A stretch of DNA of 64,000 nucleotides, from positions 124,001-188,000 of IMG/VR virus record IMGVR_UViG_3300020477_000990. One strand, given 5' to 3'. Positions within the stretch are counted from its first letter, which is position 1. Every line of letters begins with the position of its first letter. A program made the position numbers and the translations under genes. This document shows positions 2,415 to 50,200 of this stretch, piece by piece. The notes beneath the pieces are model-generated. The model had not been told where the DNA came from and ran no database searches. It worked only from the letters and a program-made list of their open reading frames with translations.

Positions 2415-2732
2415 ATGGCACGTAAGAAGAACCGTTGGAATCAATGGCGTAAAAAAGCCCCCAAAGTACCTGATAATACCTGTCCTTTGATAGATGATAT
2501 ACTCACAGATCTCGAGAAGATCATGGAAGCAAACCCTATATTTGATGAGAAGAAATTCAAGCGAGTTGAGAAGAAATTAGAGCGTCTAAGAAGTCAAAAT
2601 GAAGCCCTAAGAAACAGCGGAATTTACTGGTATGAAAAGTGTAAAGATCACTTAAAAGAGATAAAACCAGATAATTTCGAAGATATTAAGAAGATATACA
2701 AAAAAATAAAACCATTTTTTATGGCGTCATAA
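2415..2732 (+). CDS. Hypothetical phage protein (KAPKVPDxTCP...SGIYWY type)
   Basis: SD GGGAGG before ATG 2415; clean ORF. Confidence 0.75.
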   Translation: MARKKNRWNQWRKKAPKVPDNTCPLIDDILTDLEKIMEANPIFDEKKFKRVEKKLERLRSQNEALRNSGIYWYEKCKDHLKEIKPDNFEDIKKIYKKIKPFFMAS

Positions 2733-2787
2733 AGCACGATTACACTACATGATACACTATACGACATACTAGTGAATAGTAAAAGAA

Positions 2788-3185
2788 TTGTACTATCTGT
2801 GCGTATGAGCACACCCTTGAAAGAAGGGTACCCAAAAAGAGAAACCGCGTCTCGGATCACCGGGGAATCACCACCGAAAAAGTAATTAGTATATGTATAT
2901 CCACGGTCCTCTTAACCGTTAAAAACAGGGTAACCACCATTGATCTATGCTTCCCCATCATGGCCTATATTGTCGCAATTGCGGAGCGGTCTGTCTTTGA
3001 ACAATGACCTTCGGTCATTATCTCCGATCACCCGAAGCACTTATGCTAACGGCTAGTCGCACGTTAGCATGGCGTAGCTTTGGCTGGGTCGTCTTTGATC
3101 AATTGCTCCCTGAATATGTGATCACCATGCTGTATATCGGAGCGACAGCTTCGCGACCTGTTAGCTCTAGGGTGTCGCTAACAGT
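2788..3185 (+). ncRNA. Candidate structured RNA
   Basis: Stems TGTGC/GCACA, ACCCTT/AAGGGT, AATGAC-cUUCGg-TCATT, ATGCTAAC/GTTAGCAT, GGAGC(2983)/GCTCC(3105), TGTTAGC/GCTAACA; the cUUCGg loop favours the + strand. Confidence 0.4.
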
Positions 3186-3218
3186 CAGTCTTAGATAGAT
3201 ATACAGCTATATGGTAGA

Positions 3219-3271
3219 GACCCCGCTGTAAACCATAGGGACCCCGCTGTAACATATACAGACCCCGCTGT
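3219..3271 (+). repeat. Three GACCCCGCTGT direct repeats, exact 21-bp period
   Basis: Copies at 3219, 3240, 3261. Confidence 0.95.
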
Positions 3272-3305
3272 GCGGTCTGATGGATTAGTCAGGAATGTAG
3301 CTGTG

Positions 3306-3414
3306 CCGGGACTAGATCTAGTCATTAGCTCCTGATCTCCAGCTTTAGCTCCGGGACTATATGTTGTGGTGGCCTCGATCTATGCCTCTCATGCGTAGAT
3401 TTATTCCGGGACTA
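3306..3414 (+). repeat. Three CCGGGACTA direct repeats
   Basis: Copies at 3306, 3351, 3406; partial CCGGGAC at 3495. Confidence 0.9.
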
Positions 3415-3445
3415 TATATAGTGGTTTTAATTAGACTAATTTTTA

Positions 3446-3474
3446 TTGACTCATTATCGATAATATGCTATATT
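3446..3474 (+). promoter_or_regulatory. sigma70 promoter with extended -10 inside the non-coding element
   Basis: TTGACT 3446-3451, 17-nt spacer containing palindrome ATTATCGATAAT, TGcTATATT ending 3474. Confidence 0.7.
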
Positions 3475-3645
3475 AAATATACAACATGGGTCGCCCGGGA
3501 CACGTATTCCTTACCGTATGGGGTCGGGCGGTCAAGTCGATCAAGCGTACGATCCGGCGATCAGCGTATGACGAGAAACAATGATGGAGCCCAGAGATAA
3601 TAGTAGCTGTATGACGGGGGACGGTAGGGTGATACAGCTACACCT

Positions 3646-3747
3646 TCAAAGAGGCTCAAAGCACTCAAAGAGCTTCAAAGACACTCAAAGGACTCAAAGG
3701 CGCTCAAAGGGGCTCAAAGGGCCTCAAAGGCGGGGCGAGGTTCAAAG
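3646..3747 (+). repeat. Ten TCAAAG repeats phased at about 10 bp
   Basis: Copies at 3646, 3656, 3665, 3675, 3685, 3694, 3704, 3714, 3724, 3742. Confidence 0.95.
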
Positions 3748-3788
3748 AGGCCAGATGGCCCCTCCGGGGCCTATATTGAGATTTAGTC

Positions 3789-3840
3789 TTGAGATGTTGC
3801 AAAAATACAACACATTTTGAGATGTTGTAGAAATACAACA
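3789..3840 (+). repeat. Two 24-bp direct repeats TTGAGATGTTGyArAAATACAACA, each an internal inverted repeat
   Basis: Copies 3789-3812 and 3817-3840 differ at 2 positions. Confidence 0.9.
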
Positions 3841-4169
3841 GGTGTTGTATAAAAGCCACAAGTTACCGTAACTGCTGTAAACACATTTGGAACACAATTG
3901 GAACAAGATTTCAACACAATTGTTAATAGCTTATTGGCCACAATATGTTGTAGGGTGTGTGATAAACGCGACACAACATCTTGTATGAAAAAAGACTAAT
4001 AATATCAATGGTTTAGCACGGTGAAGCTGTAGCTGTGCTATATGTAGTCAGGACCTGACTAGATATTGTGCCATGGTAAAATGGTCAGAGTTCGGCCCAA
4101 CCTTTGAGTAACAGTCTATTTCTTTCTAAATTTTCTCTGCTCTAGTTAATTTTCGACTGGAGTTAATAT

Positions 4170-4198
4170 TATAATAGCATAGGTTTCTATATTGTCAA
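4170..4198 (-). promoter_or_regulatory. Leftward sigma70 promoter with 12-bp operator, no downstream ORF
   Basis: Minus strand TTGACA-atATAGAAACCTATgc-TATTAT. Confidence 0.7.
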
Positions 4199-4221
4199 GA
4201 GGTTAATTTAAATATTTTTGG

Positions 4222-4249
4222 TTGACACATTGCGTAACCGTGCTACAAT
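4222..4249 (+). promoter_or_regulatory. Early sigma70 promoter
   Basis: TTGACA 4222-4227, 16 nt, TGcTACAAT ending 4249. Confidence 0.75.
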
Positions 4250-4322
4250 AAAGAATGAGCCTGTTGTAATGAATCGATAGGTATACTTAGATGAAGCAGG
4301 CTCATTTAAATAGAAAGGAAAT

Positions 4323-4700
4323 ATGTCAAATATAAGAATAGCTTACTACAGTCACAGCGAAACACCTATATCAACACTTACTAATTGTCCAGGAGATGAT
4401 TTAGTTAAGGTAGCTAGAATGTTAGAAACAACTGCGCCAACGTGGGAAGATGCTAAGAAGTATGTACACTTAACGCAACACACGTTGCAAGAACACTATG
4501 GTGTAGATGGTTATGGTGATCCTTTATGTACTAGAATAAGTGGTGTAAAGAATAAAGAAAACTTAATTGGTTTGTTTATTCATATGAGATCTAAATGGCA
4601 CTTTAGTGATAATGGTATTGATTGGATCCCAACTGAAGAAGAATTTCCAGTCGATTCTACCGAGCCTTATAAAGTTGTTAACGGATTTGTTAACGTTTAA
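4323..4700 (+). CDS. Hypothetical early protein
   Basis: SD AGAAAGGA, promoter upstream, terminator downstream. Confidence 0.8.
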   Translation: MSNIRIAYYSHSETPISTLTNCPGDDLVKVARMLETTAPTWEDAKKYVHLTQHTLQEHYGVDGYGDPLCTRISGVKNKENLIGLFIHMRSKWHFSDNGIDWIPTEEEFPVDSTEPYKVVNGFVNV

Positions 4701-15004: not shown

Positions 15005-16165
15005 TGAAATTTATTTCGTAAAAGAAAAATAAAAAAATAAAATAATTTTCCCCTGGCCGACCATGTAAATATTCGCACCCTAAAATCGAGGAGACCTAGG
15101 CTATGACGGACGTTATATTTTTTGGGTAAAAAAGGAGAGGTGTAATATAAAGGGCGGTGCTAAAAAAATTGCAGTAAAAAATTTTTAGTTAAACATATAG
15201 AAATCTGTAATGTAGTATTTTTAATAGAAAACAACCCATATATCCAATATACCCCGCGGCAAGAACAATGATGAACTCAACAGAAACGACAGTAGATCAA
15301 CTGTTATAAAGATTGTTGTCCCCCATTCTTATGAAGCAGTAAAGAACTGTGAACTCACAATGAGCTACACAATGAATCCACGATGAAGCATTGTGATGAT
15401 GCTTAAAAATTAAAATGCTATAAAAAATAGCATTTATAACAATACCTCGCGGGAGAGGTATAACTTAATGGATCACTATGACGCTAAAATGGAAAACTGT
15501 GGTAACTGTTAAGGGCTCAACAATTATAGGTTTCTAACCTACAAATATCATGTAGCCAAATATAAACCACCATACAAGTGCTATTAAAATCAACACTATT
15601 GTTGCTATGTCATCACGCATAACACTATTTAAGCAGAGGCATTAACAAACAGGACACACGGGCTTTAAAATAGGATTAAAGGCTCTTATATACGTAGTAC
15701 TAGCTATGCTTATGAACTGTACGCAAATATGCGTTAGGCCTGTTTGTAGCATACTGCTACGGTGAAGTGATTAGTCTACGGAGTGTAATAAACTGTAACA
15801 ATCTTAATAGCTATTAGGCATGGTGGGGCATGGTGGTTGCTGTAGTTAAGAGTCTTCTGCGAGAGCTGGAAAAGGAACGTAAGTTCCGTTCCACTAGCGA
15901 GCAGATATATCCGTATGAACGAGCTATATTATATCCTTTTAATAAAGTTTATTAGATTTTGTAATTTTGGTCGCAAATACAAGCAAATACAATTATAACC
16001 GCCGCACATACAAACTATACAATATAAACCCCACATACACCGCAAATACAATATAATACTATATACCCCGCACATACAAAAAATCGCAAATACAAACTAT
16101 GCAATATAAACACCCCTACAAAAAAATTTTCGCATACACATAAAATACAATATACGCCCCTTGCG
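15005..16165. other. Second large non-coding element (candidate terminus / pac / origin)
   Basis: No ORF of 60 aa or more in about 1.2 kb; many short inverted repeats; repeat array at right end. Confidence 0.7.
15973..16150 (+). repeat. GCA(A/C)ATACAA repeat array, strongly A/C-skewed
   Basis: Exact copies at 15973, 15983, 16004, 16042, 16070, 16086 plus degenerate copies. Confidence 0.9.
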
Positions 16166-21013: not shown

Positions 21014-22195
21014 TTAATCCCTTTTGTAATATTTATATTCAGTAATGTCAGCTAGTTCTGGAAACACGTCTTCAAAGTGTTCATTTCGAAATTTATCTAC
21101 ACGTAGCGTCCAGTCAATAAATTTCATCCAATCATGATATCCATAATCATCTTGATTCATATAATCAATAAATGTTTGTATATCTTTATTTTTATGTTCT
21201 AGTAATTTATTAGAAATAGATCTTTTAGCATCGTTAGGTAAACATTTAATATTATAATGCATTGGATAGTGCAAACTATTTAGATATACACTTATACCAA
21301 ATTCTTTAGCCCATGCTAAAAATTCGGGTATGTATAGCACGTTAAAGACGTTGATTGTATGACATATACCAACAGTAAATTTTTTACTTTGTTTATTTTT
21401 AAATTCATTAATAACGTGTAATGCATTTTTCCATTTAGCAGGATGCCTTTGGTATTCAAATTGCTTACCAATACCATCTATAGAAAATTGAATGTCAACA
21501 GACTTAAAGTGGGGCCATATACTTTGCAATGCTTCATTAGGTAATTGTGTTCCATTTGTATTATAATGAATTCCTATGTTTTTAGCATAACCTTGTTCAA
21601 CGCAAAATTGTAATAACTCAAATTGTTCTTTAATTAAAAAAGGTTCTCCTCCAGTAAAGTCGATATATTCTAATGTTGGTAATAATTCTTTAAGCTCACG
21701 CCAAAACTTTTTGTTAGTTTCTGGCCATCCATGCCTAGTGTGTTTTTCTATAGTGTTATCTTCTTTATCATAATGTTGTTGTTCAGCTATCCATTTACTA
21801 GAAGAATGTGTTCCACATATACGACATTTTAAATTACAAATGTTTCCTAGTTTTAAATCAAGATATTTTAACTTAGGTTCCTGTATTATTTCCTTTGTAA
21901 AATGATGTTGATATTTTTTATTATCTCTAATTCTTTTTGAAACTTTACCACTTGCTTCTTCACTCCAGCATTTAGCACACCCACTAGGTTTTTTACCATT
22001 TAGGAATTCTTTTCTTAGGTTTCTATAATAATCACTATTCCAAGCGTCATCAAATGTGTTATTAGATAAATTGAATGGTTGCTTGTTTTTATCAGTCATG
22101 TTATTATTATACATACAGCAAGGTTTAATCCACCCTGCGGCTGTGGACTCTAATGAGATCCATGGTAATATACAAAATGATTTAGGTACGTGCAT
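21014..22195 (-). CDS. Radical SAM protein with N-terminal twitch/SPASM-like Cys cluster
   Basis: CNLKCRIC; FCILPW...PCC...CAKCW; FTGGEP; YNTNG; start 22195 is 5 nt after TAAATA. Confidence 0.9.
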   Translation of the reverse strand: MHVPKSFCILPWISLESTAAGWIKPCCMYNNNMTDKNKQPFNLSNNTFDDAWNSDYYRNLRKEFLNGKKPSGCAKCWSEEASGKVSKRIRDNKKYQHHFTKEIIQEPKLKYLDLKLGNICNLKCRICGTHSSSKWIAEQQHYDKEDNTIEKHTRHGWPETNKKFWRELKELLPTLEYIDFTGGEPFLIKEQFELLQFCVEQGYAKNIGIHYNTNGTQLPNEALQSIWPHFKSVDIQFSIDGIGKQFEYQRHPAKWKNALHVINEFKNKQSKKFTVGICHTINVFNVLYIPEFLAWAKEFGISVYLNSLHYPMHYNIKCLPNDAKRSISNKLLEHKNKDIQTFIDYMNQDDYGYHDWMKFIDWTLRVDKFRNEHFEDVFPELADITEYKYYKRD

Positions 22196-22227
22196 AACTA
22201 TATTTAACATAGCACAAAAAGGATAAA

Positions 22228-22629
22228 ATGTCTATAGAAGAAAAATATAAGAGCTATCAAGAACAATTAGAAGTACTTACTGAAAATATGGACAAATATC
22301 AGTACCTAATTAACATTGGGTCAAAAAATTCGATGCCAGAAGAATATAAATTAGACTCATTTAAAGTACATGGCTGTATGAGTCAAGTATGGCTAGTACC
22401 AAAATATAATGAAGGTAAAATAACTTTTATGGCTGACTCTGATGCACATATTACTAGAGGAGTAGTTACTATGGTAGCAGATATTTTTAGTGGGTCAACA
22501 GCAAAACAAATACAAGAAACAAATATTGATACTATAATTAATGGACTAGGTTTATTAAGTATTTTATCGCCCAATCGACGTAATGGTGCTTATAATATGT
22601 TTCATAAGGTAAAAGATTATGCCAACTAA
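22228..22629 (+). CDS. sufE: SufE family Fe-S sulfur-transfer protein
   Basis: KVHGCMSQVWL, ADSDAHITRG, LSPNRRNG. Confidence 0.9.
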   Translation: MSIEEKYKSYQEQLEVLTENMDKYQYLINIGSKNSMPEEYKLDSFKVHGCMSQVWLVPKYNEGKITFMADSDAHITRGVVTMVADIFSGSTAKQIQETNIDTIINGLGLLSILSPNRRNGAYNMFHKVKDYAN

Positions 22630-23434
22630 AATAGCTTGTATTGGTTGCAGTTGGACTGAAGGTATTGCAGTAGATGGTCAACTTATGGACCACCAAGATA
22701 CATATCCATATCTATTATCTAAATACTTAAGAGAAAATGCAAAAAATAATGTTATGTATAATGCTGGAAGGTCGGCGGCAGGAACAGAGTATTATCATTT
22801 AGTTACTGATTATCTAATTAAAAAATTTAATCCAGATATCTTTGTTATACAATTTACAACACATGATCGTGGAATATTACCGTTAGATCCAATTGATGAA
22901 AACGAGAAAAGATTAAATTTTGGTTATGATACTATTGATAACACTTATTGTAAAATTTGGGATAACAATAAAAGTATAATGCATTTAAGTCCTGGAATGG
23001 GTGCAAGTGCCAGTAAGCATAGTTCAGAAACACAATGGGATGGTTTAATAGATAAAATTTATAACGAACGAATAAAAGGAAAAATGGCTCCAGAAGTTGA
23101 ATTAGATACATTAAAAAAATATATTGCGTTGTGGTGGGAGCAATCAAAAAATTCAGATATACAAAAATATTTTTATTATTCTCATATGTATAGTTTGCTT
23201 GATTATTTAGAAGAATTAGGAAAGCAAGTAATTCCTTTTCATTGGATGAGATATAAACCAGAATTTAGAACTAAACTTTTTGAATTGAGACCATATCCAT
23301 CTATAGAAGGATTTTTAGGTAATAAACGTTTTAAAGATTTAACTCACGATAACGGATTTCATTTTGGTGTAGAAGGACACACTACGATAGTTCAGGAACT
23401 TTTAGGTCCTGCAATTCAGGAAATAATTCAATAG
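22619..23434 (+). CDS. SGNH/GDSL-like protein
   Basis: CIGCSWTEG, NAGRSAAG, DNGFH. Confidence 0.7.
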   Translation: MPTKIACIGCSWTEGIAVDGQLMDHQDTYPYLLSKYLRENAKNNVMYNAGRSAAGTEYYHLVTDYLIKKFNPDIFVIQFTTHDRGILPLDPIDENEKRLNFGYDTIDNTYCKIWDNNKSIMHLSPGMGASASKHSSETQWDGLIDKIYNERIKGKMAPEVELDTLKKYIALWWEQSKNSDIQKYFYYSHMYSLLDYLEELGKQVIPFHWMRYKPEFRTKLFELRPYPSIEGFLGNKRFKDLTHDNGFHFGVEGHTTIVQELLGPAIQEIIQ

Positions 23435-24611
23435 CATTTTCATTACGTAATTTATCAACCATATTAGTTCTTTCCCAAAACTTTGGAATAAGATGTGATG
23501 AATCTTTTTCATACATAAAGTGAATTAATTTATCATAACGTTTTTCTTTATTGTGTGTATACTTGTCAAACCATTCTTGTTCTTGAACGTATCTTTCTTC
23601 TAAACGTTTTTTCATTTCCATTGGAAGTATTTGTATAGAAAGTTCTTCTGGTACAAACAACGGATTAATCAAACTGCCACCAACAGCGTCAACCCAACCT
23701 TTTTGTATCCATTCATGATGAAAGTCTGGTACATGGAAACTATTATATACATTTAAACAAGTTGCAAGGAACACATATACATCTGGACAAATATCAAACA
23801 TACGTTTTCTATTTTCTTCAACTTGTTCCCATGATTGTCCTTTACGTAAGTATTCTCCACGTTTACCCATGCCATCTAACGAAGCACCTATTTTAACAGA
23901 TTCAAAACGATTCCATATTTCCATAACGTCTAATTTTTTAAATACCATTTGTGAAAAGTTTGTGTTGTACTTTAATCTTACGTGATACATTTTACGTTCA
24001 TCAAGTTTTTTTAGAATTCTATAATGCTCTTCCATAATTAATGGTTCACCACCTGCAAAGTATATTTCTTCTAAGCCGTCCATATATGGTTCAACTTTTT
24101 TCCAAAATGTTTCTTCGTCTTTATAAGGTCTTATAATTTTAGGCTGATCCAATGGGCCATATAATTTTACATTATCTTCATACCAACTTGATGATAAGTC
24201 TGGTCCACAAGTTCTACATTTAAAATTACACAAATTTGAAAATCTAAAATCAATATAAGGTAAGTTAATTTTATCAACTGTACCATCTTCTTTAGTGGTA
24301 CCAATCTTATCAAAATGATTTTCAAATGCTTCGTTGGCCCAAGTTCTTGTTGTATTCAATCCACTTGACTCCATGGAATAACAACGAGTACATTCTTTTG
24401 TTGGTTTATCTTTTAACATTGCTACACGCATTTTCTTTAACTTATCTGAATTCCAAATTTCTTCAAATGATTGATCTTTTAAGTTACCAAGTATCTCATT
24501 CATAGGAGCCATACAACAAGGTAACACTCTACCATCTGGCCATGAGTGTAAATGTGTCCAAGGTAACATACAAAATCGTTTTGATTTTTTTAATGCGTAA
24601 TCTTTATCCAT
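23382..24611 (-). CDS. Radical SAM protein with N-terminal twitch/SPASM-like Cys cluster
   Basis: CNFKCRTC; FCMLPW...PCC...CTRC; FAGGEP. Confidence 0.9.
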   Translation of the reverse strand: MDKDYALKKSKRFCMLPWTHLHSWPDGRVLPCCMAPMNEILGNLKDQSFEEIWNSDKLKKMRVAMLKDKPTKECTRCYSMESSGLNTTRTWANEAFENHFDKIGTTKEDGTVDKINLPYIDFRFSNLCNFKCRTCGPDLSSSWYEDNVKLYGPLDQPKIIRPYKDEETFWKKVEPYMDGLEEIYFAGGEPLIMEEHYRILKKLDERKMYHVRLKYNTNFSQMVFKKLDVMEIWNRFESVKIGASLDGMGKRGEYLRKGQSWEQVEENRKRMFDICPDVYVFLATCLNVYNSFHVPDFHHEWIQKGWVDAVGGSLINPLFVPEELSIQILPMEMKKRLEERYVQEQEWFDKYTHNKEKRYDKLIHFMYEKDSSHLIPKFWERTNMVDKLRNENAIELFPELQDLKVPELS

Positions 24612-38296: not shown

Positions 38297-41200
38297 ATGG
38301 CTGAGCAATTTGTTGCATCAAAACAATTACCAGTAGTTTTACAATCAACAAAGTTAAAAAACTTTTTTGATTCTACAGTTGACCAATGGTTTAAAAATGA
38401 AGACAATGAATTCACTCATGGATTTGTTGGAAGACGTGAAGGTAGAATTTTTGAACCAAAAAAAGATGCCTACTTAGGTGAACCGTCAGTTGATAGATTT
38501 AATTATCAACTTGAACCTTCGGTTGTAGTTAGAGATAATACTACACAAGGAATTTCATATCAAACTACATACGATGACTTTGTTAATAAATTAAGATTTG
38601 ATGGCGGCCAAATTCTAAATCATAAAAAATTATTTGAAGAAGATTATTATTCTTTTGCTCCACCTATTGACATTGATAAATTTTTAAACTATGCTAATTA
38701 TTATTGGTATCCAACTAAAGATGATTTGTCAACAGAAACAAGTGGAGTATTTCCAAGTTTACCAGCAATTGTAGTTGACGGGTCTGGTGCTACACCTATT
38801 GATCCAGCAACAGATATTATTGGAAAGCAAACATATACAGCACCAGATGCCACGGTGTTTACAAATGGTTTACAAATAAAATTTGGTCAATCAGTTACTA
38901 ATGATGCATATAAATTTAGACATACAATTACTGCAATAAATTTAAATGGCGGTGGATCTCAGTATGCAGTAAATGATAAAATTATAGTTTCAACTGTTAC
39001 TATTGGACACGTTACAAGTATTAATGCAGGGGGAACAATCACAGGAGTAGAATTAACAAATCCAGTTCTTGGTGATGGTGTTACTCCAACAGCGGTAACA
39101 ATCACAACTGCAAGTGGTAATGGTGCATTATTAACTGTTACTACATCACAAACTGATATTACTTACATAATTGAAGGTGTAGGAACAGAAATTAAATTAA
39201 TTGATATAAAAGATTTAAGGAACTTAAATGGACTAACAACTTCGTCAAAAGATTATCTAACAATGCAACGAGGTTGTAAAGATGGTAACATTTGGTCAAA
39301 AACAAACGGATGGGTACATAAAAATACATTAGACAACTATCCTAGTGTAACAACTACAACAGAAGAACAACACCTATGGGATACAGAAGGATGGGCAGGT
39401 CTTCAAACTTGGGATAGTATAACAGTATCGTCTACAACTGCATTTACAAAAACAACCGGTAGAAGAGCTACAAGACCAATTATTGAATTTAATAGTAATA
39501 TGGAATTATACGATTATGGAAAAAATCATATACTTGATGTTACAGTTATTGAAGATACATTAACAAAAACACAAATAGAATCTTATGCTAATATAACTAT
39601 TGATGGTAGGCAAATTCAAAATAGAGATACTATATTATTTCCAAGTGCGGCCAGCCAAGATGATTATGTAGCTTGGGATGGAAACTTGTGGGATCATGAT
39701 ACTGACTCAGATATATCAACAGGTGGCGGTGGACAAACTGGTGGTGATTTAGGTTGGGACGTATCTAGTTCAGCTTTTACAATTGAAGGATCTATTTGGC
39801 AAGTATCTGGTGTAGGAACAGCTCTAACACTTACACAGGTTATTACTAGTGTAAATGAAAATGATAAAGTTTATATTGATAAAGGTACAAAATATGGTAG
39901 TACTGAATGGTACTATGATGGATACAATTGGAATCAAGCACAATTAAAATCTAAAGTAAATATTGCACCATTGTTTAATTTATTTGATAATAATAAAGTT
40001 ATATTAAATGATACAGGAATATATCCATCGTCAACGTTTACAGGTTCAAAAGTATTTGGCTATAAAGTTGGTTCAGGAACCAACGATGCTGAATTAGGAT
40101 TTCCACTATCATATGTGTCTGGTAGTGGTCAAAGTGATATTGAGTTTTGTAACTATCTTAATGTCGATTCATACACATATAATACCTCAACTGCGATATC
40201 AGGATACAAGTTTTATAAGCAATTCTTGTATCCTGAAACTATTGCTAAAACTACAAACTATGAAGTAAATATAAATCCTAGTCAAAGAAATACAGCAAAC
40301 AATGTATTTTATATAAATGGTGAAGAAAGCCCAATATTGATTTTACAAAGAGGAGACACATATAATTTTAAATTTAGTTCTCCAGAAAGTGGAAGTACAG
40401 GTTACACAGGAGTAAATCATCCATTTTATATTTCAACAGGAACTCCTTGGTCATCGGGAACATATACTGGTGAATATACAACTGGTGTAACAGGATCTAG
40501 AGCATACTATGGTGGTGCTTATAGTACATTAGAATTTATAGTTCCGTCAAATGCTCCAGATACATTGTACTATCATTCTGCTACAAGTAATAATCCTGTT
40601 AAATTAGTTATAGTTGATAATCCTATTACTAAAATTAATGAAGCTACAGAAACATTTTATAGAAATGAATGGAACAAAAATTTAGGAAGTAAAAAATTAA
40701 AACAACGTTTAGTTCAAGAACATACAGTTTCAAATACAAATTTAACTACTAAACCAACACTAGAAGTTATACCAACATCTATTATAGATATGGAAGTATA
40801 TAAAAATGGAATTAGACAAAAGTTTGGTACAGATTATACTACAACTGCAAGTGTTATAATTAACTTTACAACTGCATTAGTTGAAAATGATTTTATTAAA
40901 ATTTATTACGAGACAAATGATAATACTCCAATTCGTCAAGTAAACTATTTTGAAATACCAAAGAACCTTGAATCAAATGCTTCAAATGAAGAAGTTGTTT
41001 CAGGAACATATTCAGAATTTTTCCAACACTTTGAATCTATAGTTCAAAACCAAATTGGGTTTACTGGTGATGTAAGTGGAGCAAATAATTATCGCGATAC
41101 TGAAAAAGATTTAGGAAAAGGTAAAGTTATTTTACAACATGATGGTTCACTAATGAAAGTAATGGCATTTGCTAATAATGATGACCTGGATATTATATCA

Positions 41201-44200
41201 TCAATAAGATATGTAAAAAATAGATATCAAGAGTTTCAATTAAAATTTTTAAATGCTGTAAATAAAATTCAAGTATCACAAGATGCTTCTTTGTTAACAA
41301 CTTCACAAATTGTTGATAAAGCAATTAAAAATATTACTATAGATAAAATTGCAACTGATCCATTTACATATTCATTTATGATGGCTAGTGGTGATAGATA
41401 TACTTCAGAATCTCATACTATTACAACAACTAATTATACTTGGGGAAATACAAACACATTCTTACAAAGTAGTGATACACAAGAAGTATTTAATCAAGAG
41501 CCTGGCTTAACAATTGCATCAGCATATGATCCAAAAAATGATTATGATAGTAAAGCATTATACGTTTATAAAAATAATGTATTAATGACATATAATCATG
41601 ATTATATTGTAAGTTATTCTTCATCTGGAACAAAAATTATCTTTATAGGATATGCGGCAAATAAACCAAAAGTTAATGATGTAATTTCAATTAGATATTA
41701 TACAACAATTCAACCAACTTGGATACCACCTACTCCAGCAAAACTAGGAGCGGCAAAAGTTTACCAACCGGTTGAAATATCTGATACTATAACATATTCA
41801 AGTGGAACTAGAAACTTTATACAATGTCATGATGGGTCATTTGTTTTAAAATATAATGATTTAAGAGATACTGCATTATTAGAATTAGAAAAAAGAATTT
41901 ATAACACAATCAATAGAAGATTTACTTCTAGGGATTATGTTCCATTATTAGAAATTAATCAAAAACAACCAAACTATTTTAATTCAACTAGTTGGTCTAG
42001 AAATGATATTATTAATTTAATGCGTCCAATATTTACAAGATGGGCATCAGAAAATGCATTAAACTATCATGAGAATACTGGTTATAATAATGTTCTAACA
42101 TTAACAGGAGTTTCTGGTACATTTAAAGTTGGAGAATCTGTTTCTGGTGCAAGTTCTAAAGCAAAAGGTGTAATTACAAAAATTGCAAGTAATGTAATAA
42201 CTATAAACCAAGTTATTGATAGTTTCCAACTTAATGAAAAAATAACTGGTGCAACAAGTGGTGCAGAAGGTACAACAGATCCAAATGGTGGTATTACTAT
42301 TGATTGGAAAGTAATGAATTACTCTTCATTAAAAGATCCAAATGGAAATAGTTTACCAGGACACTGGCGTGGTATGTATCGTTGGTTCTATGGAACAGAT
42401 AGACCACATACTCATCCATGGGAAATGTTAGGCTTTGCACAAAAACCAATTTGGTGGGATAATTATTATTCTTGGACGGCATCGTCGACAAGAGCAAAAT
42501 TAATAAGTGATGTTGAACAAGGTATTATTAGATCAGGCTTACGTGAAAACTATACTGATAAATCATATCTTAACGCAAATAATGTTTATAAAAAACCAAA
42601 CTTTGCGTCATATGTTCCGGTTGATAATACTGGAAAACTATTAAGTCCAAAAGAAATAGGAATTATTTCAGATAATCCTACAGAATATAATTCACAACTT
42701 GATTGGAAATTTGGAGATGGTGCTCCAGTTGAAAATGCATTTGTTGTTTCTCCGGTATATCAATATGCAATACAAAAAATATTATATTTGACAGCACCAG
42801 GTTTATATGTTGACTTGCTTTGGAATTCAAATGATATATTAAAATCATCAGCTGATGCAACTCAAATTATTGACTCTGTAAGTGGTAAAAGACCTAACAA
42901 TAAAAACTATTATGTCCATAGAGAAGTAGATGCTAATAGTATAACATATAACAGAGCTGGAGTACAAAACTTTTTAGTTGAGTATTTAAATTATGTAGGT
43001 AAGTCAGTTACAGATTCATTTGGTAATGTAATTAGAAACCTACAAACAAATTTATCATATCGTTGTGCAGGGTTTATAGACTCATCAACACTTAAAATTG
43101 AATCACAAGCATATGACTCAGTAAGTAATTCAACTAGCATTGTAATTCCAACAGAAGATATTAATATATCATTACATACAGGTGGAAGCATTGATGAAGT
43201 ATCATATAGTGGTTTTATTGTTCAGGTAGTTGAGCAAGGATATAAGATTTTTGGATACGATATAGTACATCCATACTTTAATGTACTTAGACCAATGATT
43301 TCAGGTAGATCAAAAAAACTTAGAATTGGTGGAAAAGAAGTTTCTCCAGTTTCTTATAAACCTGGAACAACGTATCATACAGATGAAATTGTTAAACATG
43401 AAGACAAATATTATCAAAGCATCACTACTCAAGTAACATTAACAACTGATACTAATCCAGATTTACAAAAATGGAAAGTGCTTAAAGTTTTACCAACAGT
43501 AGGTGGAACAGAAGTAGACCACTATTATGATTTTGATGAATCTAATGTATATCAAATTGATTATGGAACTGTATATAAAACTAGACAACAAGTTTATGAT
43601 GCAATAGTAGGATATGGAAAATATTTAGAATTAGTTGGATGGGACTTTAGTGAGTTTAATGTTGATATTGGAGAAAATAAAAATTGGGATTATAGTGCCA
43701 AAGAATTTTTATTTTGGAGTTTAGGAAAATGGGAAAAAGGAAATTATGTTACATTAAGTCCTAGTGCTGATAAATTAAAATTTATACCAGCTTCAGGTGT
43801 TGTCCAAAGTATTAAAGATATTAATAATGGTGTATATAGTGCATTAAACAAAGAAGGTTTTGGACTAGATTCAAAACAACTAGATGTTATACGTGATGAT
43901 GACATGGTAACAATATCACAAAAAGATGGAATTGGAATTTATGGATTAAGATTATCAGTTAAAGAAACTGAGCATATGATTACATTAGAAAACAAAACTA
44001 TCTTTAATGATACAATTTATAATACAATATTAGCACAAAGACAGCCACGTGTAAAAATTAATACAACTAGAACATTAGGATGGCATGGTAAACTTGAAGC
44101 AGATGGTTATATTATAAGTGGAACGTCATTGCTTAATAACTTTGAAAAATCAGTAACTGATTCTGGAAAATATTATGATATAGAATCTTCTCTTGTAGCT

Positions 44201-47200
44201 ACTAATTTTAGAGATTCAGCTATGCACTTAATTGGATACCAAGAAAGAAATTATTTAACTAATTTACAAATTAGTAAAACAAATCAAGTTAAGTTTTATC
44301 AAGGAATGATAAAACAAAAAGGTACACAAAATAGTATTGATAGATTATTAAGATCAACAACTGTAAGTACTGATCAAACATTTGATACATATGAAGAATG
44401 GGCATTTAAAGTTGGTGAATTTGGCTCAACAGCTTTTGATCAAAAAATTGAATTAAGATTAAGAGCAAACGAAGTTGTTAGTGATCCACAAACATTTGAG
44501 TTTTTATTACCATCAGATGCATCAACAACTTCAGGCTATGATAGTCCAACTGATGATGTAATTACAATTGATATTGATGATACAGTACGTTGGTTGAAAA
44601 AACCTAAAGGTGAAAAAACGTTAGCTAATTTATGGCCAGTAGTGTCTACAGTTAATACAGTAGTTCCTACATCAGGTTATGTACATTATGATGATCCAAC
44701 TTATAGAGCATTGAATTCAAATGCACTTGCTAACGTTTATTCATCAGAAACTTCAAATATAGCAATTGGGTCAACAACTTGGGTAGCAAAAGATGATGTA
44801 GCTGGAAGAGATTGGAATGCATATAAATTATATGATACCGGAGATACTATTGATAACGTAGTATCAAATGGTGATGCCAATACTGCAATGAAAGTTACAG
44901 TATCTGGTACAGGCTCAAGTATTGGAGTAGCAAAAGATTTAATTATACATAAAACATATGACGGTGATGGAACACTTGTTATGGATCCTACTAGTTGGGG
45001 CACACACAAAATAACATTATCAACTGCAACGCCAACGGCACCTACAATTACAATTCCATTTTCTGATGTAGCAGGTAGTGGTGCAGAAATGGCAGTAGGG
45101 AATATTAATGGAACGGTATCAACAGTAACAGTTACAGCAGGTGGTGATGGCTTTGCTGTAGGAGATGTAATTTCATTCTCAGGCAGTAATGGAGCAGGTG
45201 GACAAATGACTGTTAATAAAGTTGCCGGCGGAGCAGGTGCTACAGCATCGGCAGTTATAGCAGATACTTTCCCAATTACTTCAATACAAGTTTTAGAACA
45301 AGGTACAGGTTACAGTTCTGCAACTGTTAATATTTCAGGTGGTGGGGGTTCTGGTGCTACTGCAACAGCAACTATTGCCGGCGGTAAAATTACTGCTATT
45401 ACATTAACTGGTGCAGGTTCAGGATATACATATCAGCCTACGATTACAATTACAGGTGATGGAGATGACGCAACTGCTTTTGCTACACTTGGATCAAAAG
45501 CAGATGGACAAATTACATCAATTACTGTTAGCGGAGGCGGAACTGGTTATACAGCAACACCAACAGTTAAAATTACAGACGCTTCTGGTACAGGTGCAAC
45601 TGCAACGGCAGTTATGTCAGCTGGAGCGGTTGCAAGTGTTACAATAACTAATTCAGGTTCAGGATATACAGCACCAACAATTTCATTTACTGGCCCATTA
45701 AGTGGTGCAACTACAGGATCAGAACTAACACTTAATAATGGTGGAGATAATTATGCAGAAGCACCAACGGCATATTCAGTAGTTGATTCTTCAGGCACAA
45801 CAAAAACATCCGGAGTACATTATACACCAGCAACATTTACATATACAGGTGATGGTGCTAGTGGAGTATTTGGTGAAATAAAAGATATTACAATTACAGC
45901 AGGTGGTTCAAATTACCAATCACCAAGTATTAAAATTATTAATGCATCAGGAACAACAGTACATACATTAACAACACCAACTAACATTACACTTACATCA
46001 GGATCTATTACTGCGGTAACAGTTCCAACTGGAGCATGGAATAAAGGATTTAGTGCAGGAGTAATAAGTACTGCAACTGGAAAAATAACAGTTACAGATA
46101 CTAAAGCAAATCATACAGTTAACTTGTCTCCGTCATTAGCTAAAGTACACGCATTAACATCATTAACAGCAAACGTAACTACAGCATTTGATGGGACACC
46201 ATCTGTAACATTAGAAAAATCAGAAGACAATGGAGCATCATGGAGTGCATTATCTACTGCCGCTGTTGATTTAACTACCGTTGCTTCAGCAAACGTTAAT
46301 GTTACAGGAACAATAACTGACAATGCAAACGCAATTGTTAGAGCAAGTATTTCAGTTTCAACAGGAACAACTGGAAATGTTTCTTTATCATTAAATTATA
46401 CTAAAAAAGAATACGCAATAACTAAAAATGGTAATGCTGAATATATTTCAACTGCTGATAATACAACAATTAATTCATCTGGTATTAAATTATTAGATTG
46501 GAAAGATGTTAGATTAAACAATGCGTTAGCAACTGATAAAGCACACGTTGTAACTAGTACAGCAACAACACTTACAAATTTCTTAACAGGAACAGGTTTA
46601 AGCAATAGTGTTTGGACAGAAGGTGCTCTTGTTTGGTTAGATGATGACTTTACTGGTAAGTGGGGAGTATATAGATATACTGCCAATGCAACAATAGTTT
46701 CAAGTTATAATAATATACGTGGAAGTGAACCTGCAAGTTTTTCAGCGGCAGGTGGTACATGGATTTTACATAGTGGAGTAGATTACAGTAACACTTCACA
46801 AACTACTACATCATATTTTGCAAAAACAAAACGTAGACAAAAAGATAGAATAGATACAAAACAATTTAATAAAACGGTTATGTATGATGATAGAAGTCAT
46901 CAAGTTGATTTAAGTATGAATATATTTGATCCATTAAAAGGAATTTTACCTGCATCTGCAGATAGAGAAATCTCATACAAGTCAGAGTTAGATCCTGCAA
47001 TATATAATAATCATAGTGATACTACTTTAATTAGTACAAGTAATCCATGGAAGGATGACTATGTTGGAAAAGTTTGGTGGGATCAATCAACGGCAAGATT
47101 TATTGAATATGAAAGTCATGATAATGATTATAGAAGAACACATTGGGGTCGTTTGTTTGATGGAGCGTCAATTGACGTTTATGAGTGGGTTAAATCAACT

Positions 47201-50200
47201 AAAACACCAAGCACTTATTCAGGAACAGGAACAGTTAAGACAACAACAAATTATGTAAGTGAAACTGTTATTGATGCTTATACTAAAACAAATTTAACTT
47301 ATTACTATTATTGGGTTAAAGATAAAACTACAGTACCAAAATTAGATTCAAGAATAAATGATGTTGCTACGGTATCAAATACAATTCAATCTCCATTAAC
47401 ACAAGGGTTAAGTTATTTTGCACCAGTATCACCGAATTCATTTATGATATCAAATGTAGTTCATAATTTAACTAAAGACAATACTGTATTACAAATTAAT
47501 TATAGAGATCGTGCTGTAAAAGATAAAACAGATGGAGTACACGCACAATGGTTATTAATTAAAGAAAATTACAATGATGCACAAATTCCAAATCAAATTT
47601 GGAATAAAATGGTAGATAGTATTTGTGGTTATGATGCTACAGAAAAAACTGTACCAGATACAACATTGTCAATAAATGATCAATATGGAAATAAAGTTAG
47701 ACCAAGACAAACTTGGTTTAAAGATATTAAAAAAGCAAGAAAGGTATTATTCCAATCATTGAATAATATTACAACTAATATTAGTTTAGATGTTGAAAAT
47801 TCTAATTGGGATAGTACAGTTACAACATCAGTATATAATGAAAAAACAAATTGGTATTACAATACTACATTTAATGATGATACGATTATAGATGAAATTG
47901 TTGATTATAAAGCTGATATAGTTATTGCAAATTTAAATGAAGGTGATGTAGTTAAAGTAAATTATGATTATGCATCTAAATGGGCATTATACAAATATAC
48001 TGATGCAGATTATTTGGCTGGTACAACAACATCAATTGATACAGGTAATTTATCTTTAGTAAGAATTGGTTTACAAACAGCAACCACTAAACTTAAAACG
48101 ACAGTATATACTGAAGATAATTCTATAGCATTGGCTACAGAGTTAAGACAATATTTAACAGCATTAAGAAACAATGTGTTTATTAGTGATAAACTAGGAA
48201 AACAAAATGAAGTACTGTATTCATTAATAAGATATGTATCTAGTGAACAAAGTCATGTAGATTGGTTATTTAAAACAACATACATGAATGTAATTCAACA
48301 AGATACTACATTAACACAAAAAGCATCTTATGAAAAAGATCCGTTTAATGATATTAAATCATACGTTGAAGAAGTTAAACCATACAAAGCTAAAATTAGA
48401 GATTTCTTAAGTAAAAAATCTCCAGCAAGAGAAAATGCAAATATGGCAATGAGTGACTTTACATCTACGTCAGATTATGCAATTAATTCTAGTGGTAGTG
48501 GAACAACAAATCCTACTCCAAAATTTACAACTAAATTAGCATTTGATAGAATTAGTAAAAAAATAACAATACTATCTCCAACAACTAATAATATTGATGC
48601 ATGGATGGGAGTAACAGTTGCTACAATATCTGGAGCAACAAAATCAAACCCAGTTAGCATAACAGCTACCGGACATGGCTTTACAAGTGGAAGACAAGTA
48701 ACAATTGATGGTGTAAATGGAATGACTAACCTTAATACTAATACATATACTATTACAAGAGTTGATGATAATACATTTACTTTAAACTCTACTGATGGTA
48801 CAACCTATGGAGCATATACATCTGGTGGTACAGCAACGGCAGTTGGAGTATCATATACAGCAGGTAAAGAACTTAAACACAATGGTGGCTACTGGCAAGT
48901 TACAACAAATCATACTTCAGGAACATTTATATCTGATGTACAAACAGGTAAATTACAACATTATAATTTTAGTCCTGTAACTGCTCCAACAGATGTTGCA
49001 AGTATTAATCAAATTAAACAAGCAACACCAGAATCATCACACGTTGATAGATTAGCAAAATATCATTTTGCAAGTGAGTTAGCAAACGTTGATACTGCAA
49101 ATACATCTTCAGTAAGTTCGTTTGTAACGTCATTAGAAAATGCTATATCATCTTATACAGATTTAGATATACAACCAATTGGATTTGTTGTTAATAGAGA
49201 TAGAATAGGTCAAGAGTTAACTTCTTTTGCATGGGATAGTTTAAAATGGGATGCCACAGCATTAACTACAAATCCAACAATTGGATTTGCTGATGAGTCA
49301 ACTCAAAATTGGTATGATTCAAAATTTGTAAATGAAAACTTACAATGGAAAACAGGAACAGTATTTGCTAAAGATTCATTTGTAAAATATTCTGACTTAA
49401 CACACTTTACAGCTTGGACGGCATCAACAAGTTATACTGTTGGTGATATTGTTAAACATGAAAACAAAGTTTATGTTGCAAACGTAACACATAAAAATTT
49501 AACAGCAGAAACAACTATGCAAACATCACGTTGGGATGAAGTTGTAGATTTAATTTATTATACAAACGCAGAACATACTGCCGCGGCAACATTTAAAACA
49601 GATTATGATGCAGGCAAGTGGGTATTGGTACAAAAAGTTTTAGACTCTTCAGGATTTGCAAGACCAAACAACGATCCATATCCAGAAGAAGTATTACCAA
49701 TTACTCCTAGAGAAAGTTTATTCATAACTGTTAAAACTTATACAAATGTAACTGGTAGTGGTACTAATGCAGATCCATATGTTGGAGATGGAGACTTATC
49801 ACAATTCCAAATGCATTATAGACCATATGGAACAGTTACATATTTGAGACAAAAATTTGTTGACGATAGCGGAGGAAATTCAACTACAGATCATACAACA
49901 TTAAGTGACGCTTGTAGTGAATATTCAAATATCATTGTAGTATCTGATGCAAGTAAATTACCTACTCCTAAACAATCACAATTAAGTGCTGATGGAGTAT
50001 ATACTGCACAGCCAGGAATAATTTATATTGGTACTGAAAGAATAGAATATAATAAAATTAGCGGAAATAAACTTTTAGATGTAGTTCGTGGTACTAGAGG
50101 AACTACTATTGGAAGTTATAGTCCAGGAGCGGAAGTATATAGTGGAAATACACATATTCCAAGTGCAACTAGTGGATATTATAATGATACCGGTTATAGT

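What the first reader, a model, noticed from the sequence alone, without database searches (positions are those of the whole stretch)
2788..3185. Candidate ~400-nt structured RNA upstream of the iterons
At least six helices, including a cUUCGg tetraloop (3003-3019), a long-range GGAGC/GCTCC pairing, and an internal duplication GGTCTGTCTTTGAAC (2988) / GGTCGTCTTTGATC (3087). I could not match it to tmRNA, RNase P or an intron. It could be a standalone phage ncRNA or a ColE1 RNA II-like primer transcript fed from the late promoter near 2387.
Basis: inference. Interest (0 to 1): 0.65.

Follow-up and report, generated by a model that had tools for sequence, protein, structure and literature searches.

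The report
Conserved hairpin module beside phage iterons
A roughly 125-base stretch in a gene-free region of an uncultured marine jumbo phage keeps the same hairpin folds in several diverged relatives, so it is a real and undescribed structured element, but it is much smaller than the 400-nt RNA proposed, and whether it works as RNA or as single-stranded DNA is still open.

Summary
The window comes from a 328-kb marine jumbo phage, a distant relative of Rak2, PA5oct and Atu_ph07. The finding lies in a 1.59-kb ORF-free gap (2733-4322) that holds the most GC-rich stretch of the genome and is full of iterons.

The helices are in the sequence, but the proposed 400-nt fold is not supported:
- The whole stretch folds with z of only about -2 on either strand.
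- Its long-range pairs break in relatives.
- The "cUUCGg tetraloop" is really a 7-bp stem with a UUC triloop.

A smaller core is real (2998-3121): two triloop hairpins, a 24-pair bulged hairpin at 3029-3086, and a conserved 3' tail.
- It folds with z = -5.6.
- Compensatory changes keep the fold in at least four phage lineages. Of 35 pairs, 15-18 changed on both sides, 93% of cells stay paired against 25-40% in shifted controls, and 0 of 500 shuffles reach the observed values.
- The genome has one copy, and Rfam has no match.

Which strand folds, and whether it folds as RNA or DNA, is unresolved. I found no promoter, terminator or transcript data.

My best reading is a cis-acting, protein-docking hairpin module of an origin-like control region, probably as plus-strand RNA. 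A single-stranded DNA origin hairpin is the main rival.

The parts
2733..2790 (+). Conserved block that starts at the stop codon of the upstream ORF (AGCAC...ACACTA...CATACTAGT)
   Evidence: It differs at one of about 55 positions from the L072-type relatives, while the ORF just upstream is only 48-69% identical. It is partly kept in L138, where the upstream ORF is unrelated. The motif occurs once in the genome.
2798..2829 (+). Two adjacent short hairpins (2798-2813 and 2813-2829)
   Evidence: Perfect stems in the window. In the L072 type, the two changes in the second stem turn U-A into U.G, and the other changes fall in loops. No equivalent was recognised in L138.
2842..2853 (+). Invariant 12-mer AAACCGCGTCTC, followed by ATCACC
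   Evidence: Identical in the window, the L072 type and L138. It occurs once in the 328-kb genome. It is conserved as sequence, not as a helix.
2903..2919 (+). Hairpin ACGGU-7-ACCGU directly after TATCCAC
   Evidence: In the L072 type the stem is unchanged and the loop differs. L138 has ACCG-8-CGGU at the same place, so one pair flips from G-C to C-G. This rests on my manual alignment, because MAFFT misplaces the hairpin.
2998..3028 (+). Core, part 1: hairpin b (3003-3019, 7 bp, UUC triloop) and mini-hairpin c (3020-3028, AUC-UCC-GAU)
   Evidence: The pair 3008/3014 is C-G in the window, G-C in the L072 type and A-U in L138. Hairpin c is AAGCC-UUC-GGCUU in L138 and AGCC-UCC-GGCU in L081. Both loops stay U-Y-C in every lineage.
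3029..3086 (+). Core, part 2: long bulged hairpin (24 pairs) with an invariant tandem U.G, two bulged bases and an invariant GGCGUAGC (3071-3078)
   Evidence: 14 of its 24 pairs changed on both sides and stayed paired; 92.7% of cells are paired. The basal 7 pairs are entirely different in L138 yet still complementary in a MAFFT-only alignment. A shortened version occurs in L104 and L093. The terminal loop is not conserved.
3097..3121 (+). Conserved unpaired 3' tail (GATCAA..GCTCCCTGA.TAT.TGA)
   Evidence: Kept in L123, and in L138, L081 and L080 as GCCCCUGA...UAUGA/UAUGUGA. GCTCCCTGA occurs once in the genome.
3129..3184 (+). Two lineage-specific hairpins (3129-3149 and 3158-3184)
   Evidence: Among 13 close variants the stems never vary while the loops are hypervariable. 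L123 has two hairpins of unrelated sequence in the same interval. They are absent from L081 and L138.
3219..3271 (+). Three 11-bp iterons GACCCCGCTGT at a 21-bp period
   Evidence: These are the only three copies in the genome. They are kept in L123 (3 exact copies plus a degenerate one), L138 and L081 (2 each) and in far relatives L008, L012 and L061 (54% amino-acid identity in a marker protein), at the syntenic place.
3306..3425 (+). Three CCGGGACTATAT-type repeats
   Evidence: Family D3. Related ACCACTATATCTAGT repeats occur in L093 and L007.
3446..3474 (+). Sigma-70-type promoter TTGACT-17-TATATT firing rightward, away from the candidate
   Evidence: 10 of 12 consensus positions, TG-extended. 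An equivalent promoter stands at the same place in L123, L138, L081 and L062.
3646..3771 (+). Array of about 10 TCAAAG heptamers at a roughly 10-bp period, then the hairpin GGCCCC-UCC-GGGGCC (3757-3771)
   Evidence: Relatives carry their own heptamer at the same place.

Best explanation
The stretch 2788-3185 is not one 400-nt RNA. It is the left part of a conserved 1.6-kb non-coding control region of a marine jumbo phage. That region has several iteron families, a conserved rightward early-type promoter and a heptamer array at a 10-bp period, and it is most likely a replication origin or control locus.

Embedded in it is a module of about 125 nt (2998-3121). As a single strand it folds into two short hairpins with U-Y-C triloops and one 24-pair bulged hairpin, followed by a conserved unpaired tail.

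Proposed mechanism: the plus strand is transcribed, probably by read-through from the upstream gene because the module has no promoter of its own. The folded RNA then acts in cis. Its invariant internal-loop region (tandem U.G, two bulged bases, GGCGUAGC) would be a docking or processing site for a phage or host protein, placed 130 nt from the 11-bp iterons.

Shown: the fold, its maintenance by compensatory change, its single copy, and its fixed orientation relative to the downstream promoter.

Inferred: that it is RNA, that the plus strand folds, the protein partner, and any link to replication.
For: Fold and covariation
- The core folds far better than shuffles in three lineages (z from -3.6 to -5.65).
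- A MAFFT-only alignment of the window, L072 and L138 gives 35 pairs, 15 of them with compensatory changes.
- On five sequences, 93% of cells are paired against 25-40% when partners are slid by 1-3 columns. 18 of 35 pairs changed on both sides, and 0 of 500 shuffles reach the observed values.

Selection
- Against relatives at about 90% identity, only 4 of 46 variable sites fall in the 89 stem positions defined on the window alone (P 0.011). All four keep pairing.
- Fourfold-degenerate sites of the flanking genes differ by about 10%.
- No gene is called in the gap on about 30 independent contigs.

Context
- The module is linked to the iterons in the window and in L123, L138 and L081.
- It has the same orientation relative to the downstream sigma-70 promoter in all lineages, including L093 and L104.

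Hints that it is plus-strand RNA
- 14 cells are G.U (valid on the plus strand only) against 3 that are A.C (valid on the minus strand only).
- A tandem U.G stays invariant while its neighbours covary.
- A plus-strand ORF ends upstream of the module in three lineages.
Against: - No plus-strand promoter or terminator flanks the module, and I obtained no transcript data.
- Both strands fold equally well.
- The G.U excess rests on about 5 pair positions against 3, so the strand is not settled.
- Most stems are perfect Watson-Crick inverted repeats, as DNA-level elements also are.
- Only about 5 independent sequence types were available, and one of the alignments was fitted to the model.
- The covariance models did not find the module in the larger related contigs G001, G002, G004 and G005.
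- The origin assignment rests on architecture only. GC skew gives no origin signal, and no DnaA boxes were found.
Confidence: 0.42

Rival explanations
1. Single-stranded DNA element of the origin. When the iteron region is opened, one DNA strand extrudes the hairpins, and a primase, helicase loader or initiator recognises them. This resembles the ssi sites next to the iterons of IncQ oriV, or G4-type complementary-strand origins.
For: - The module sits 35-130 bp from the conserved 11-bp iterons in four lineages.
- No transcription signals were found.
- Both strands are equally stable and the stems are mostly perfect Watson-Crick.
- On the minus strand the triloops read C-GAA-G or C-GGA-G in every lineage. 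From my own knowledge, this is the d(C-GNA-G) class of very stable DNA mini-hairpins known from phage single-strand origins.
- Only 5 such hairpins exist in the 328-kb genome, and 2 of them are in this gap.
Against: - The invariant tandem T.G (or C.A on the other strand) and the two bulges would weaken a DNA hairpin.
- L093 and L104 keep the hairpin without the GACCCCGCTGT iterons.
- Phages with T4-like virion modules are not known to use ssi-type origins (own knowledge).
- No cognate primase was identified.
Confidence: 0.3
2. One reading: a roughly 400-nt multi-helix RNA (2788-3185), either free-standing or a ColE1 RNA II-like primer transcribed from near 2387 into the iterons.
For: - The upstream gene and the candidate are on the same strand with no terminator between them.
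- The region is the most GC-rich of the genome.
- Local hairpins are enriched.
Against: - The whole stretch has z of only about -2.
- A relative at about 90% identity breaks 10 of the 17 substituted pairs of the global fold.
- The GGAGC/GCTCC closing helix is not kept in L160.
- The 5' half has no conserved fold.
- Variant L157 replaces everything left of about 2880 with a 20-nt tandem array.
- The upstream gene, and hence any promoter in front of it, is not conserved between lineages.
- TTTAAATA is no more frequent than base composition predicts.
Confidence: 0.07
3. Double-stranded DNA operators. The inverted repeats are binding sites for dimeric DNA-binding proteins and never fold.
For: - The stems are perfect palindromes.
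- The region is packed with other protein-site-like repeats.
- GATCACC occurs 3 times here out of 8 in the whole genome.
Against: - The basal 7 pairs of the long hairpin are completely different in L138 yet still complementary.
- One pair takes three different Watson-Crick identities.
- A 24-pair arm with conserved bulges and non-Watson-Crick positions is not a typical operator.
- The GATCACC copies are not conserved.
Confidence: 0.1
4. Chance hairpins in neutral GC-rich spacer DNA.
For: Overall divergence of 2733-3215 from the L072 type (9.7%) equals the fourfold-site divergence of the neighbouring genes (about 10%).
Against: - Substitutions avoid the stems, and those in stems keep pairing.
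- The core differs at only 5 of 124 positions from the L072 type and is invariant among 13 population variants.
- The fold survives in lineages whose flanking protein is only 55% identical.
Confidence: 0.03

Closest known systems
ssi (single-strand initiation) hairpins next to the iterons of IncQ plasmids (RSF1010/R1162 oriV), and G4-type complementary-strand origins
   Same: Conserved stem-loops lie a short distance from a small set of direct-repeat iterons. The stems are conserved while the apical loops are free to vary.
   Different: No plasmid-type primase or initiator was identified, and the host replicon is a 328-kb phage with T4-like structural genes. The hairpin here carries conserved bulges and G.T positions. 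Function on DNA is untested. The comparison rests on my own knowledge of those systems.
ColE1 RNA II primer and T4 R-loop or oriE-type origin transcripts
   Same: A non-coding, GC-rich, hairpin-rich stretch lies upstream of origin-like repeats. Next door, an early-type promoter reads through an iteron array, as is described for T4 oriE (own knowledge).
   Different: The candidate has no dedicated promoter and no antisense RNA with a promoter and terminator, and its 400-nt fold is not conserved. The conserved promoter at 3446-3474 fires away from the candidate.
RNase III processing or stabiliser hairpins of phage mRNAs (T7 R sites), and the CUUCGG hairpins of T4 intercistronic regions
   Same: An irregular helix of more than 20 bp with a conserved internal distortion lies in an intergenic region downstream of an ORF on the same strand. 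Short, very stable C...G-closed loops are also present.
   Different: The loops here are UUC or UCC triloops, not UUCG tetraloops. The module lies 270-400 nt beyond the stop codon. Cleavage is untested.
Double-strand origins of rolling-circle plasmids and CRESS viruses (iterons plus a nick hairpin, e.g. pMV158 with three 11-bp repeats)
   Same: Three 11-bp direct repeats lie near a hairpin.
   Different: The apical loop of the long hairpin is not conserved, so no nick motif is present. I did not search for a Rep gene.
N4 virion-RNA-polymerase hairpin promoters
   Same: On the minus strand, 3003-3019 is a 7-bp stem with a 3-nt G-R-A loop. This matches the geometry of those promoters (own knowledge).
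   Different: No T7-like or N4-like RNA polymerase domain was found in the genome (a weak test). The 3986-aa protein is a virion structural protein. Such hairpins are not spread over the genome.

Membership tests
Any Rfam 15 family (tmRNA, RNase P, group I/II introns, 6S, GOLLD, ROOL and others) | Covariance-model match at or above the family's gathering score | tested here: not met
   There were 0 matches in the whole window at gathering score. With E up to 10 on 2600-4400, there were only two chance-level hits, both outside 2788-3185.
Structured nucleic-acid element (generic) | Base pairs maintained by compensatory substitutions among homologs | tested here: met
   15 of 35 pairs are compensatory in a MAFFT-only alignment. 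18 of 35 pairs, 93% of cells paired and 0 of 500 shuffles reaching the observed values on the model-fitted alignment. This holds only for the core 2998-3086.
ColE1 RNA II-type primer | Dedicated promoter upstream that fires toward the origin | tested here: not met
   No plus-strand sigma-70-like site lies in 2733-3440. The upstream ORF and its leader are not conserved between lineages.
ColE1 RNA II-type primer | Conserved multi-stem fold of the whole primer | tested here: not met
   The global fold is broken in relatives. The 5' half has no conserved fold.
ColE1 RNA II-type primer | Persistent RNA-DNA hybrid processed by RNase H, and control by an antisense RNA I | not testable with these tools
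ssi-type origin hairpin (IncQ or G4 type) | Conserved hairpin(s) adjacent to initiator iterons | tested here: met
   The module lies 35-130 bp upstream of the GACCCCGCTGT iterons in the window, L123, L138 and L081. L093 and L104 keep the hairpin without these iterons.
ssi-type origin hairpin (IncQ or G4 type) | Recognition of the folded DNA strand by a cognate primase | not testable with these tools
Rolling-circle double-strand origin | Conserved nick sequence in the hairpin loop | tested here: not met
   The apical loop of the 3029-3086 hairpin differs completely between lineages.
N4-type hairpin promoter | Phage-encoded T7-like or N4-like single-subunit RNA polymerase | tested here: inconclusive
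   PF00940 was not found in the genome, but the control search matched nothing in any genome either. The giant 3986-aa ORF is a structural protein.
DnaA-dependent (oriC or P1 oriR-like) origin | DnaA boxes (TTATCCACA with at most 1 mismatch) | tested here: not met
   There are none in 2733-4322, and sites with up to 2 mismatches are no denser there than in the genome. GATC reaches 8 per 500 nt, which ties the genome maximum, but the sites are not conserved.

The most novel reading that the evidence does not exclude
The core (2998-3121) is a previously undescribed structured RNA class specific to a clade of marine Rak2-like jumbo phages. It is made from the phage's origin region and works with the 11-bp iterons, for example as the docking site or primer-processing signal for the initiator. 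That would be a phage analogue of RNA-dependent origin firing.
Probability: 0.25. Interest if true: 0.65.

Novelty: new member of a known kind. Interest (0 to 1): 0.45.

Why it matters
Replication origins and non-coding RNAs of jumbo phages with T4-like virion genes are almost unknown, and these marine phages are uncultured.

This locus gives a concrete cis-element with real covariation that sits beside lineage-conserved iterons. It offers an anchor for finding the origin or control region in related metagenomic genomes, and a defined target for RNA-seq mapping or binding studies.

If it is RNA, it is a new motif for Rfam-type catalogues. If it is DNA, it would show plasmid-like single-strand initiation signals in a jumbo phage.

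Tried and rejected
- **Rfam.** Nothing at gathering score or at permissive thresholds.
- **GenBank phages.** blastn of the gap found no match.
- **IMG/VR pattern scans.** Exact or degenerate patterns gave nothing, or only the two far relatives already known. The looser pattern returned 80 listed loci of at least 118 hits, and the covariance model rejected all of them.
- **Upstream ORF as an anchor.** It gave one non-syntenic locus, L003. The downstream ORF gave none in IMG/VR.
- **Closer IMG/VR relatives G001-G005.** No homolog of 2788-3185 by blastn or by covariance model.
- **Extending the L123-type contig.** The exact-protein look-ups found nothing longer.
- **Global MFE as a conserved structure.** Rejected.
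- **A coding explanation.** The longest ORF is 64 aa, and no gene is called on any related contig.
- **DnaA boxes.** Rejected.
- **Dam or GATC heptamers.** Enriched in this genome but not conserved.
- **TACACTATAC or CATACTAGT as a genome-wide promoter motif.** Not repeated elsewhere.
- **N4-like RNA polymerase.** No support.
- **attC-like or boxB-like readings of single hairpins.** The motifs are not conserved in relatives.
- **GC skew.** It rises monotonically and gives no origin signal.
- **Literature search for origins of jumbo phages.** Nothing applicable.
- **A conserved fold for the transcript region downstream of the 3446 promoter.** None found on a poor alignment.

Full report
**Setting**

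The window is bases 124001-188000 of a 328,149-bp IMG/VR virus record with 31.8% GC. The record carries 16 tRNA genes and a permuted tmRNA. Its baseplate wedge protein is about 38-44% identical to those of Salicola phage SCTP-2, Agrobacterium phage Atu_ph07, Pseudomonas phage PA5oct and the Rak2/121Q group. It is therefore an uncultured marine jumbo phage with T4-like structural genes.

The finding lies in a 1.59-kb gap without credible ORFs (2733-4322). This gap contains the most GC-rich 300-nt stretch of the genome, with a peak of 0.547. Gene callers left the equivalent gap empty on about 30 independent related contigs.

**Layout of the gap**

From left to right:
- The candidate, 2788-3185.
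- Three 11-bp GACCCCGCTGT iterons at a 21-bp period (3219-3271).
- Three CCGGGACTATAT-type repeats (3306-3425).
- A good sigma-70-type promoter firing rightward (3446-3474).
- About ten TCAAAG heptamers at a 10-bp period (3646-3747).
- The hairpin GGCCCC-UCC-GGGGCC (3757-3771).
- Further repeat families (3789-3922).
- Divergent promoters at about 4198 (minus strand) and 4222 (plus strand).

**Checking the observation**

The helices, the CUUCGG sequence, the GGAGC and GCTCC pentamers and the internal duplication are all present. An objective rule finds 7 perfect hairpins against 3.0 +/- 1.7 in shuffles, and 45 against 16 stem base pairs.

Three points differ from the description:
- The full 398 nt folds only slightly better than shuffles, and equally on both strands (z = -1.99 and -2.18).
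- The CUUCGG hairpin is a 7-bp stem with a UUC triloop, not a tetraloop.
- The duplicated GTCTTTGA(A/T)CAAT is an inverted copy of the TCAAAG iteron (pair I25).

Rfam has no match at any threshold.

**Finding homologs**

GenBank phages and IMG/VR gave no DNA homolog of the candidate.

A scan of metagenome contigs with the neighbouring 202-aa protein gave 80 loci. Contigs L072 and L097 align over the whole gap at about 80% identity. Exact-protein look-ups added about 25 more contigs of this "L072 type", which give 13 distinct versions of the candidate at about 90% identity. Fourfold-degenerate sites of the flanking genes differ by about 10%, so overall the candidate evolves at roughly the neutral rate.

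The substitutions are not evenly spread, however:
- Only 4 of 46 variable sites hit the 89 stem positions defined on the window alone (P 0.011).
- All four keep pairing: C-G to G-C at 3008/3014, and two U-A to U.G changes at 2824 and 2825.
- Loops of the 3' hairpins are hypervariable between invariant stems.
- The core 2998-3121 differs at only 5 of 124 positions from the L072 type and is invariant within that type.

The long-range pairs of the global MFE fold are not kept. Ten of the 17 substituted pairs are broken. The GGAGC partner is lost in L160, and variant L157 replaces everything left of about 2880 with a 20-nt tandem array.

**Distant homologs and covariation**

A profile search with nhmmer and reading of the sequences revealed much more diverged versions:
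- L138, whose flanking protein is 55% identical.
- L081 and L080.
- The end of L123.

A MAFFT-only alignment of the window, L072 and L138 over 2990-3122 gives an RNAalifold structure of 35 pairs, 15 of them with compensatory double changes. These include seven consecutive basal pairs of the long hairpin that are entirely different in sequence.

A covariance model built from that alignment (R1) recovers L081 (E 3e-11) and L080. It finds a single copy in the phage's own genome and none in four larger related contigs.

On the five-sequence alignment:
- 93% of cells are paired, against 25-40% when partners are slid by 1-3 columns.
- 18 of 35 pairs changed on both sides.
- None of 500 shuffles reaches the observed values.

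A second model (R2) gives weak hits in L104 and L093. By eye these hold a shortened hairpin with the same centre, CUU-R-UGC ... GCA-Y-GGC. They belong to the clade of L004 and L007, which lacks the GACCCCGCTGT iterons.

The core folds with z = -5.65 on the plus strand and -5.57 on the minus strand in the window, and between -3.4 and -4.8 in L138 and L081.

The 5' half (2826-2996) shares strong sequence motifs with L138, such as an invariant AAACCGCGTCTC, but no common fold. The two 3' hairpins are lineage-specific.

**What it is**

The evidence establishes a conserved, single-copy, structured module of about 90-125 nt. It consists of two U-Y-C triloop hairpins, a 24-pair hairpin with two conserved bulges, an invariant tandem U.G and an invariant GGCGUAGC, and an unpaired tail. 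It lies inside a conserved iteron-rich non-coding region, always in the same orientation relative to the downstream rightward promoter.

The evidence does not establish which strand folds, or whether the folded molecule is RNA or DNA:
- G.U cells outnumber A.C cells 14 to 3, but over only about 5 against 3 positions.
- Both strands are equally stable.
- No promoter or terminator flanks the module.

I favour plus-strand RNA acting in cis as a protein-docking or processing hairpin (confidence 0.42). The reasons are the conserved non-Watson-Crick positions flanked by covarying pairs, and the plus-strand ORFs that end upstream in three lineages.

The main rival is a single-stranded DNA origin hairpin of the ssi type (0.3). 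It is favoured by the fixed proximity to the iterons, the lack of transcription signals, and the fact that the triloops read C-GRA-G on the minus strand. That class is known from my own knowledge as unusually stable DNA mini-hairpins at phage single-strand origins. Only 5 such hairpins occur in the genome, 2 of them in this gap.

The remaining alternatives are less likely:
- Double-stranded operators fit the covariation poorly.
- Chance is excluded in practice.

**Origin assignment**

Calling the gap a replication origin is an inference from architecture: several iteron families, 10-bp phasing and promoters. GC skew is uninformative. No DnaA boxes are present. GATC is enriched but its sites are not conserved.

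**Novelty**

No Rfam family, no annotated phage record and no paper found in the library search describes this element. It is best classed as a new member of a known kind: a conserved cis-acting hairpin module at a phage control or origin region. It is of moderate interest until its strand and molecule are known.

Noticed in passing
window 3446-3771: A conserved sigma-70-type promoter (3446-3474) reads into a GC-rich stretch. It then meets about ten TCAAAG heptamers at a 10-bp period and a GGCCCC-UCC-GGGGCC hairpin. Relatives keep the layout but use their own heptamer: TCAATG/TCAGAG in L138, ATCAAT in L062, TCACGA/TCACTA in L007. A short GGGGCGAGGTT follows the array in both the window and L062. 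This could be an initiator- or partition-protein array, or a repeat-bearing early RNA.
   Followed up: partly
window 3219-3271; L008 1008-1040; L012 1132-1165; L062 1501-1532: The 11-bp iteron GACCCCGCTGT (three copies here, and nowhere else in the genome) is kept at the syntenic place in phages whose marker protein is only 54% identical. That is unusually deep conservation for a non-coding repeat.
   Followed up: partly
window 4084-4110 and 4100-4200: A 27-nt element is 96% identical in the distant relative L012 and contains an inverted iteron copy (CCTTTGAGT). The surrounding 100 nt are 97% identical to L097, although neighbouring stretches are 54-78% identical.
   Followed up: no
G000:C1:94952-95270 (outside the window) and genome-wide: The phage carries a permuted tmRNA with tag ADENLALAA and 16 tRNA genes. 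The record starts and ends inside a tRNA-Ala gene, and this overlap is what is scored as terminal repeats.
   Followed up: no
L157 1-150: One population variant of the L072 type replaces the left part of the candidate (everything left of window position about 2880) with five copies of a 20-nt tandem repeat (GAATTAACGAACGCAGACCT). This shows the region is modular.
   Followed up: no
L004 2352-2870; L007 2443-3114; L093 2393-2630; L104 409-638: In a sister clade, the equivalent gap holds a small conserved protein (MATKDT...) behind a strong promoter. L004 and L007 also have a basic 78-83-aa protein on the opposite strand. GGGCTCGCTATT repeats flank these genes. None of this is present in the window.
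   Followed up: no
window 16046-16160: Another repeat-rich non-coding spot, with ATACAATATA units next to CCCCGCACATACA-like units.
   Followed up: no
window 21014-24611 and 57682-59088: Three radical-SAM-domain proteins (phrog_14086) lie in one window of a phage genome.
   Followed up: no
window 38297-50257: A 3986-aa ORF next to the baseplate wedge gene matches a virion structural protein family (phrog_10938). It carries a CBM_5_12 carbohydrate-binding module and an E1_FCCH-like domain near its C-terminus.
   Followed up: partly
window 2415-2732 against L097 and L181: The ORF just upstream of the conserved non-coding block is only 48-69% identical to its counterpart in phages whose neighbouring genes are 87-95% identical. 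The switch to high identity occurs exactly at the stop codon, which suggests a recombination boundary.
   Followed up: partly
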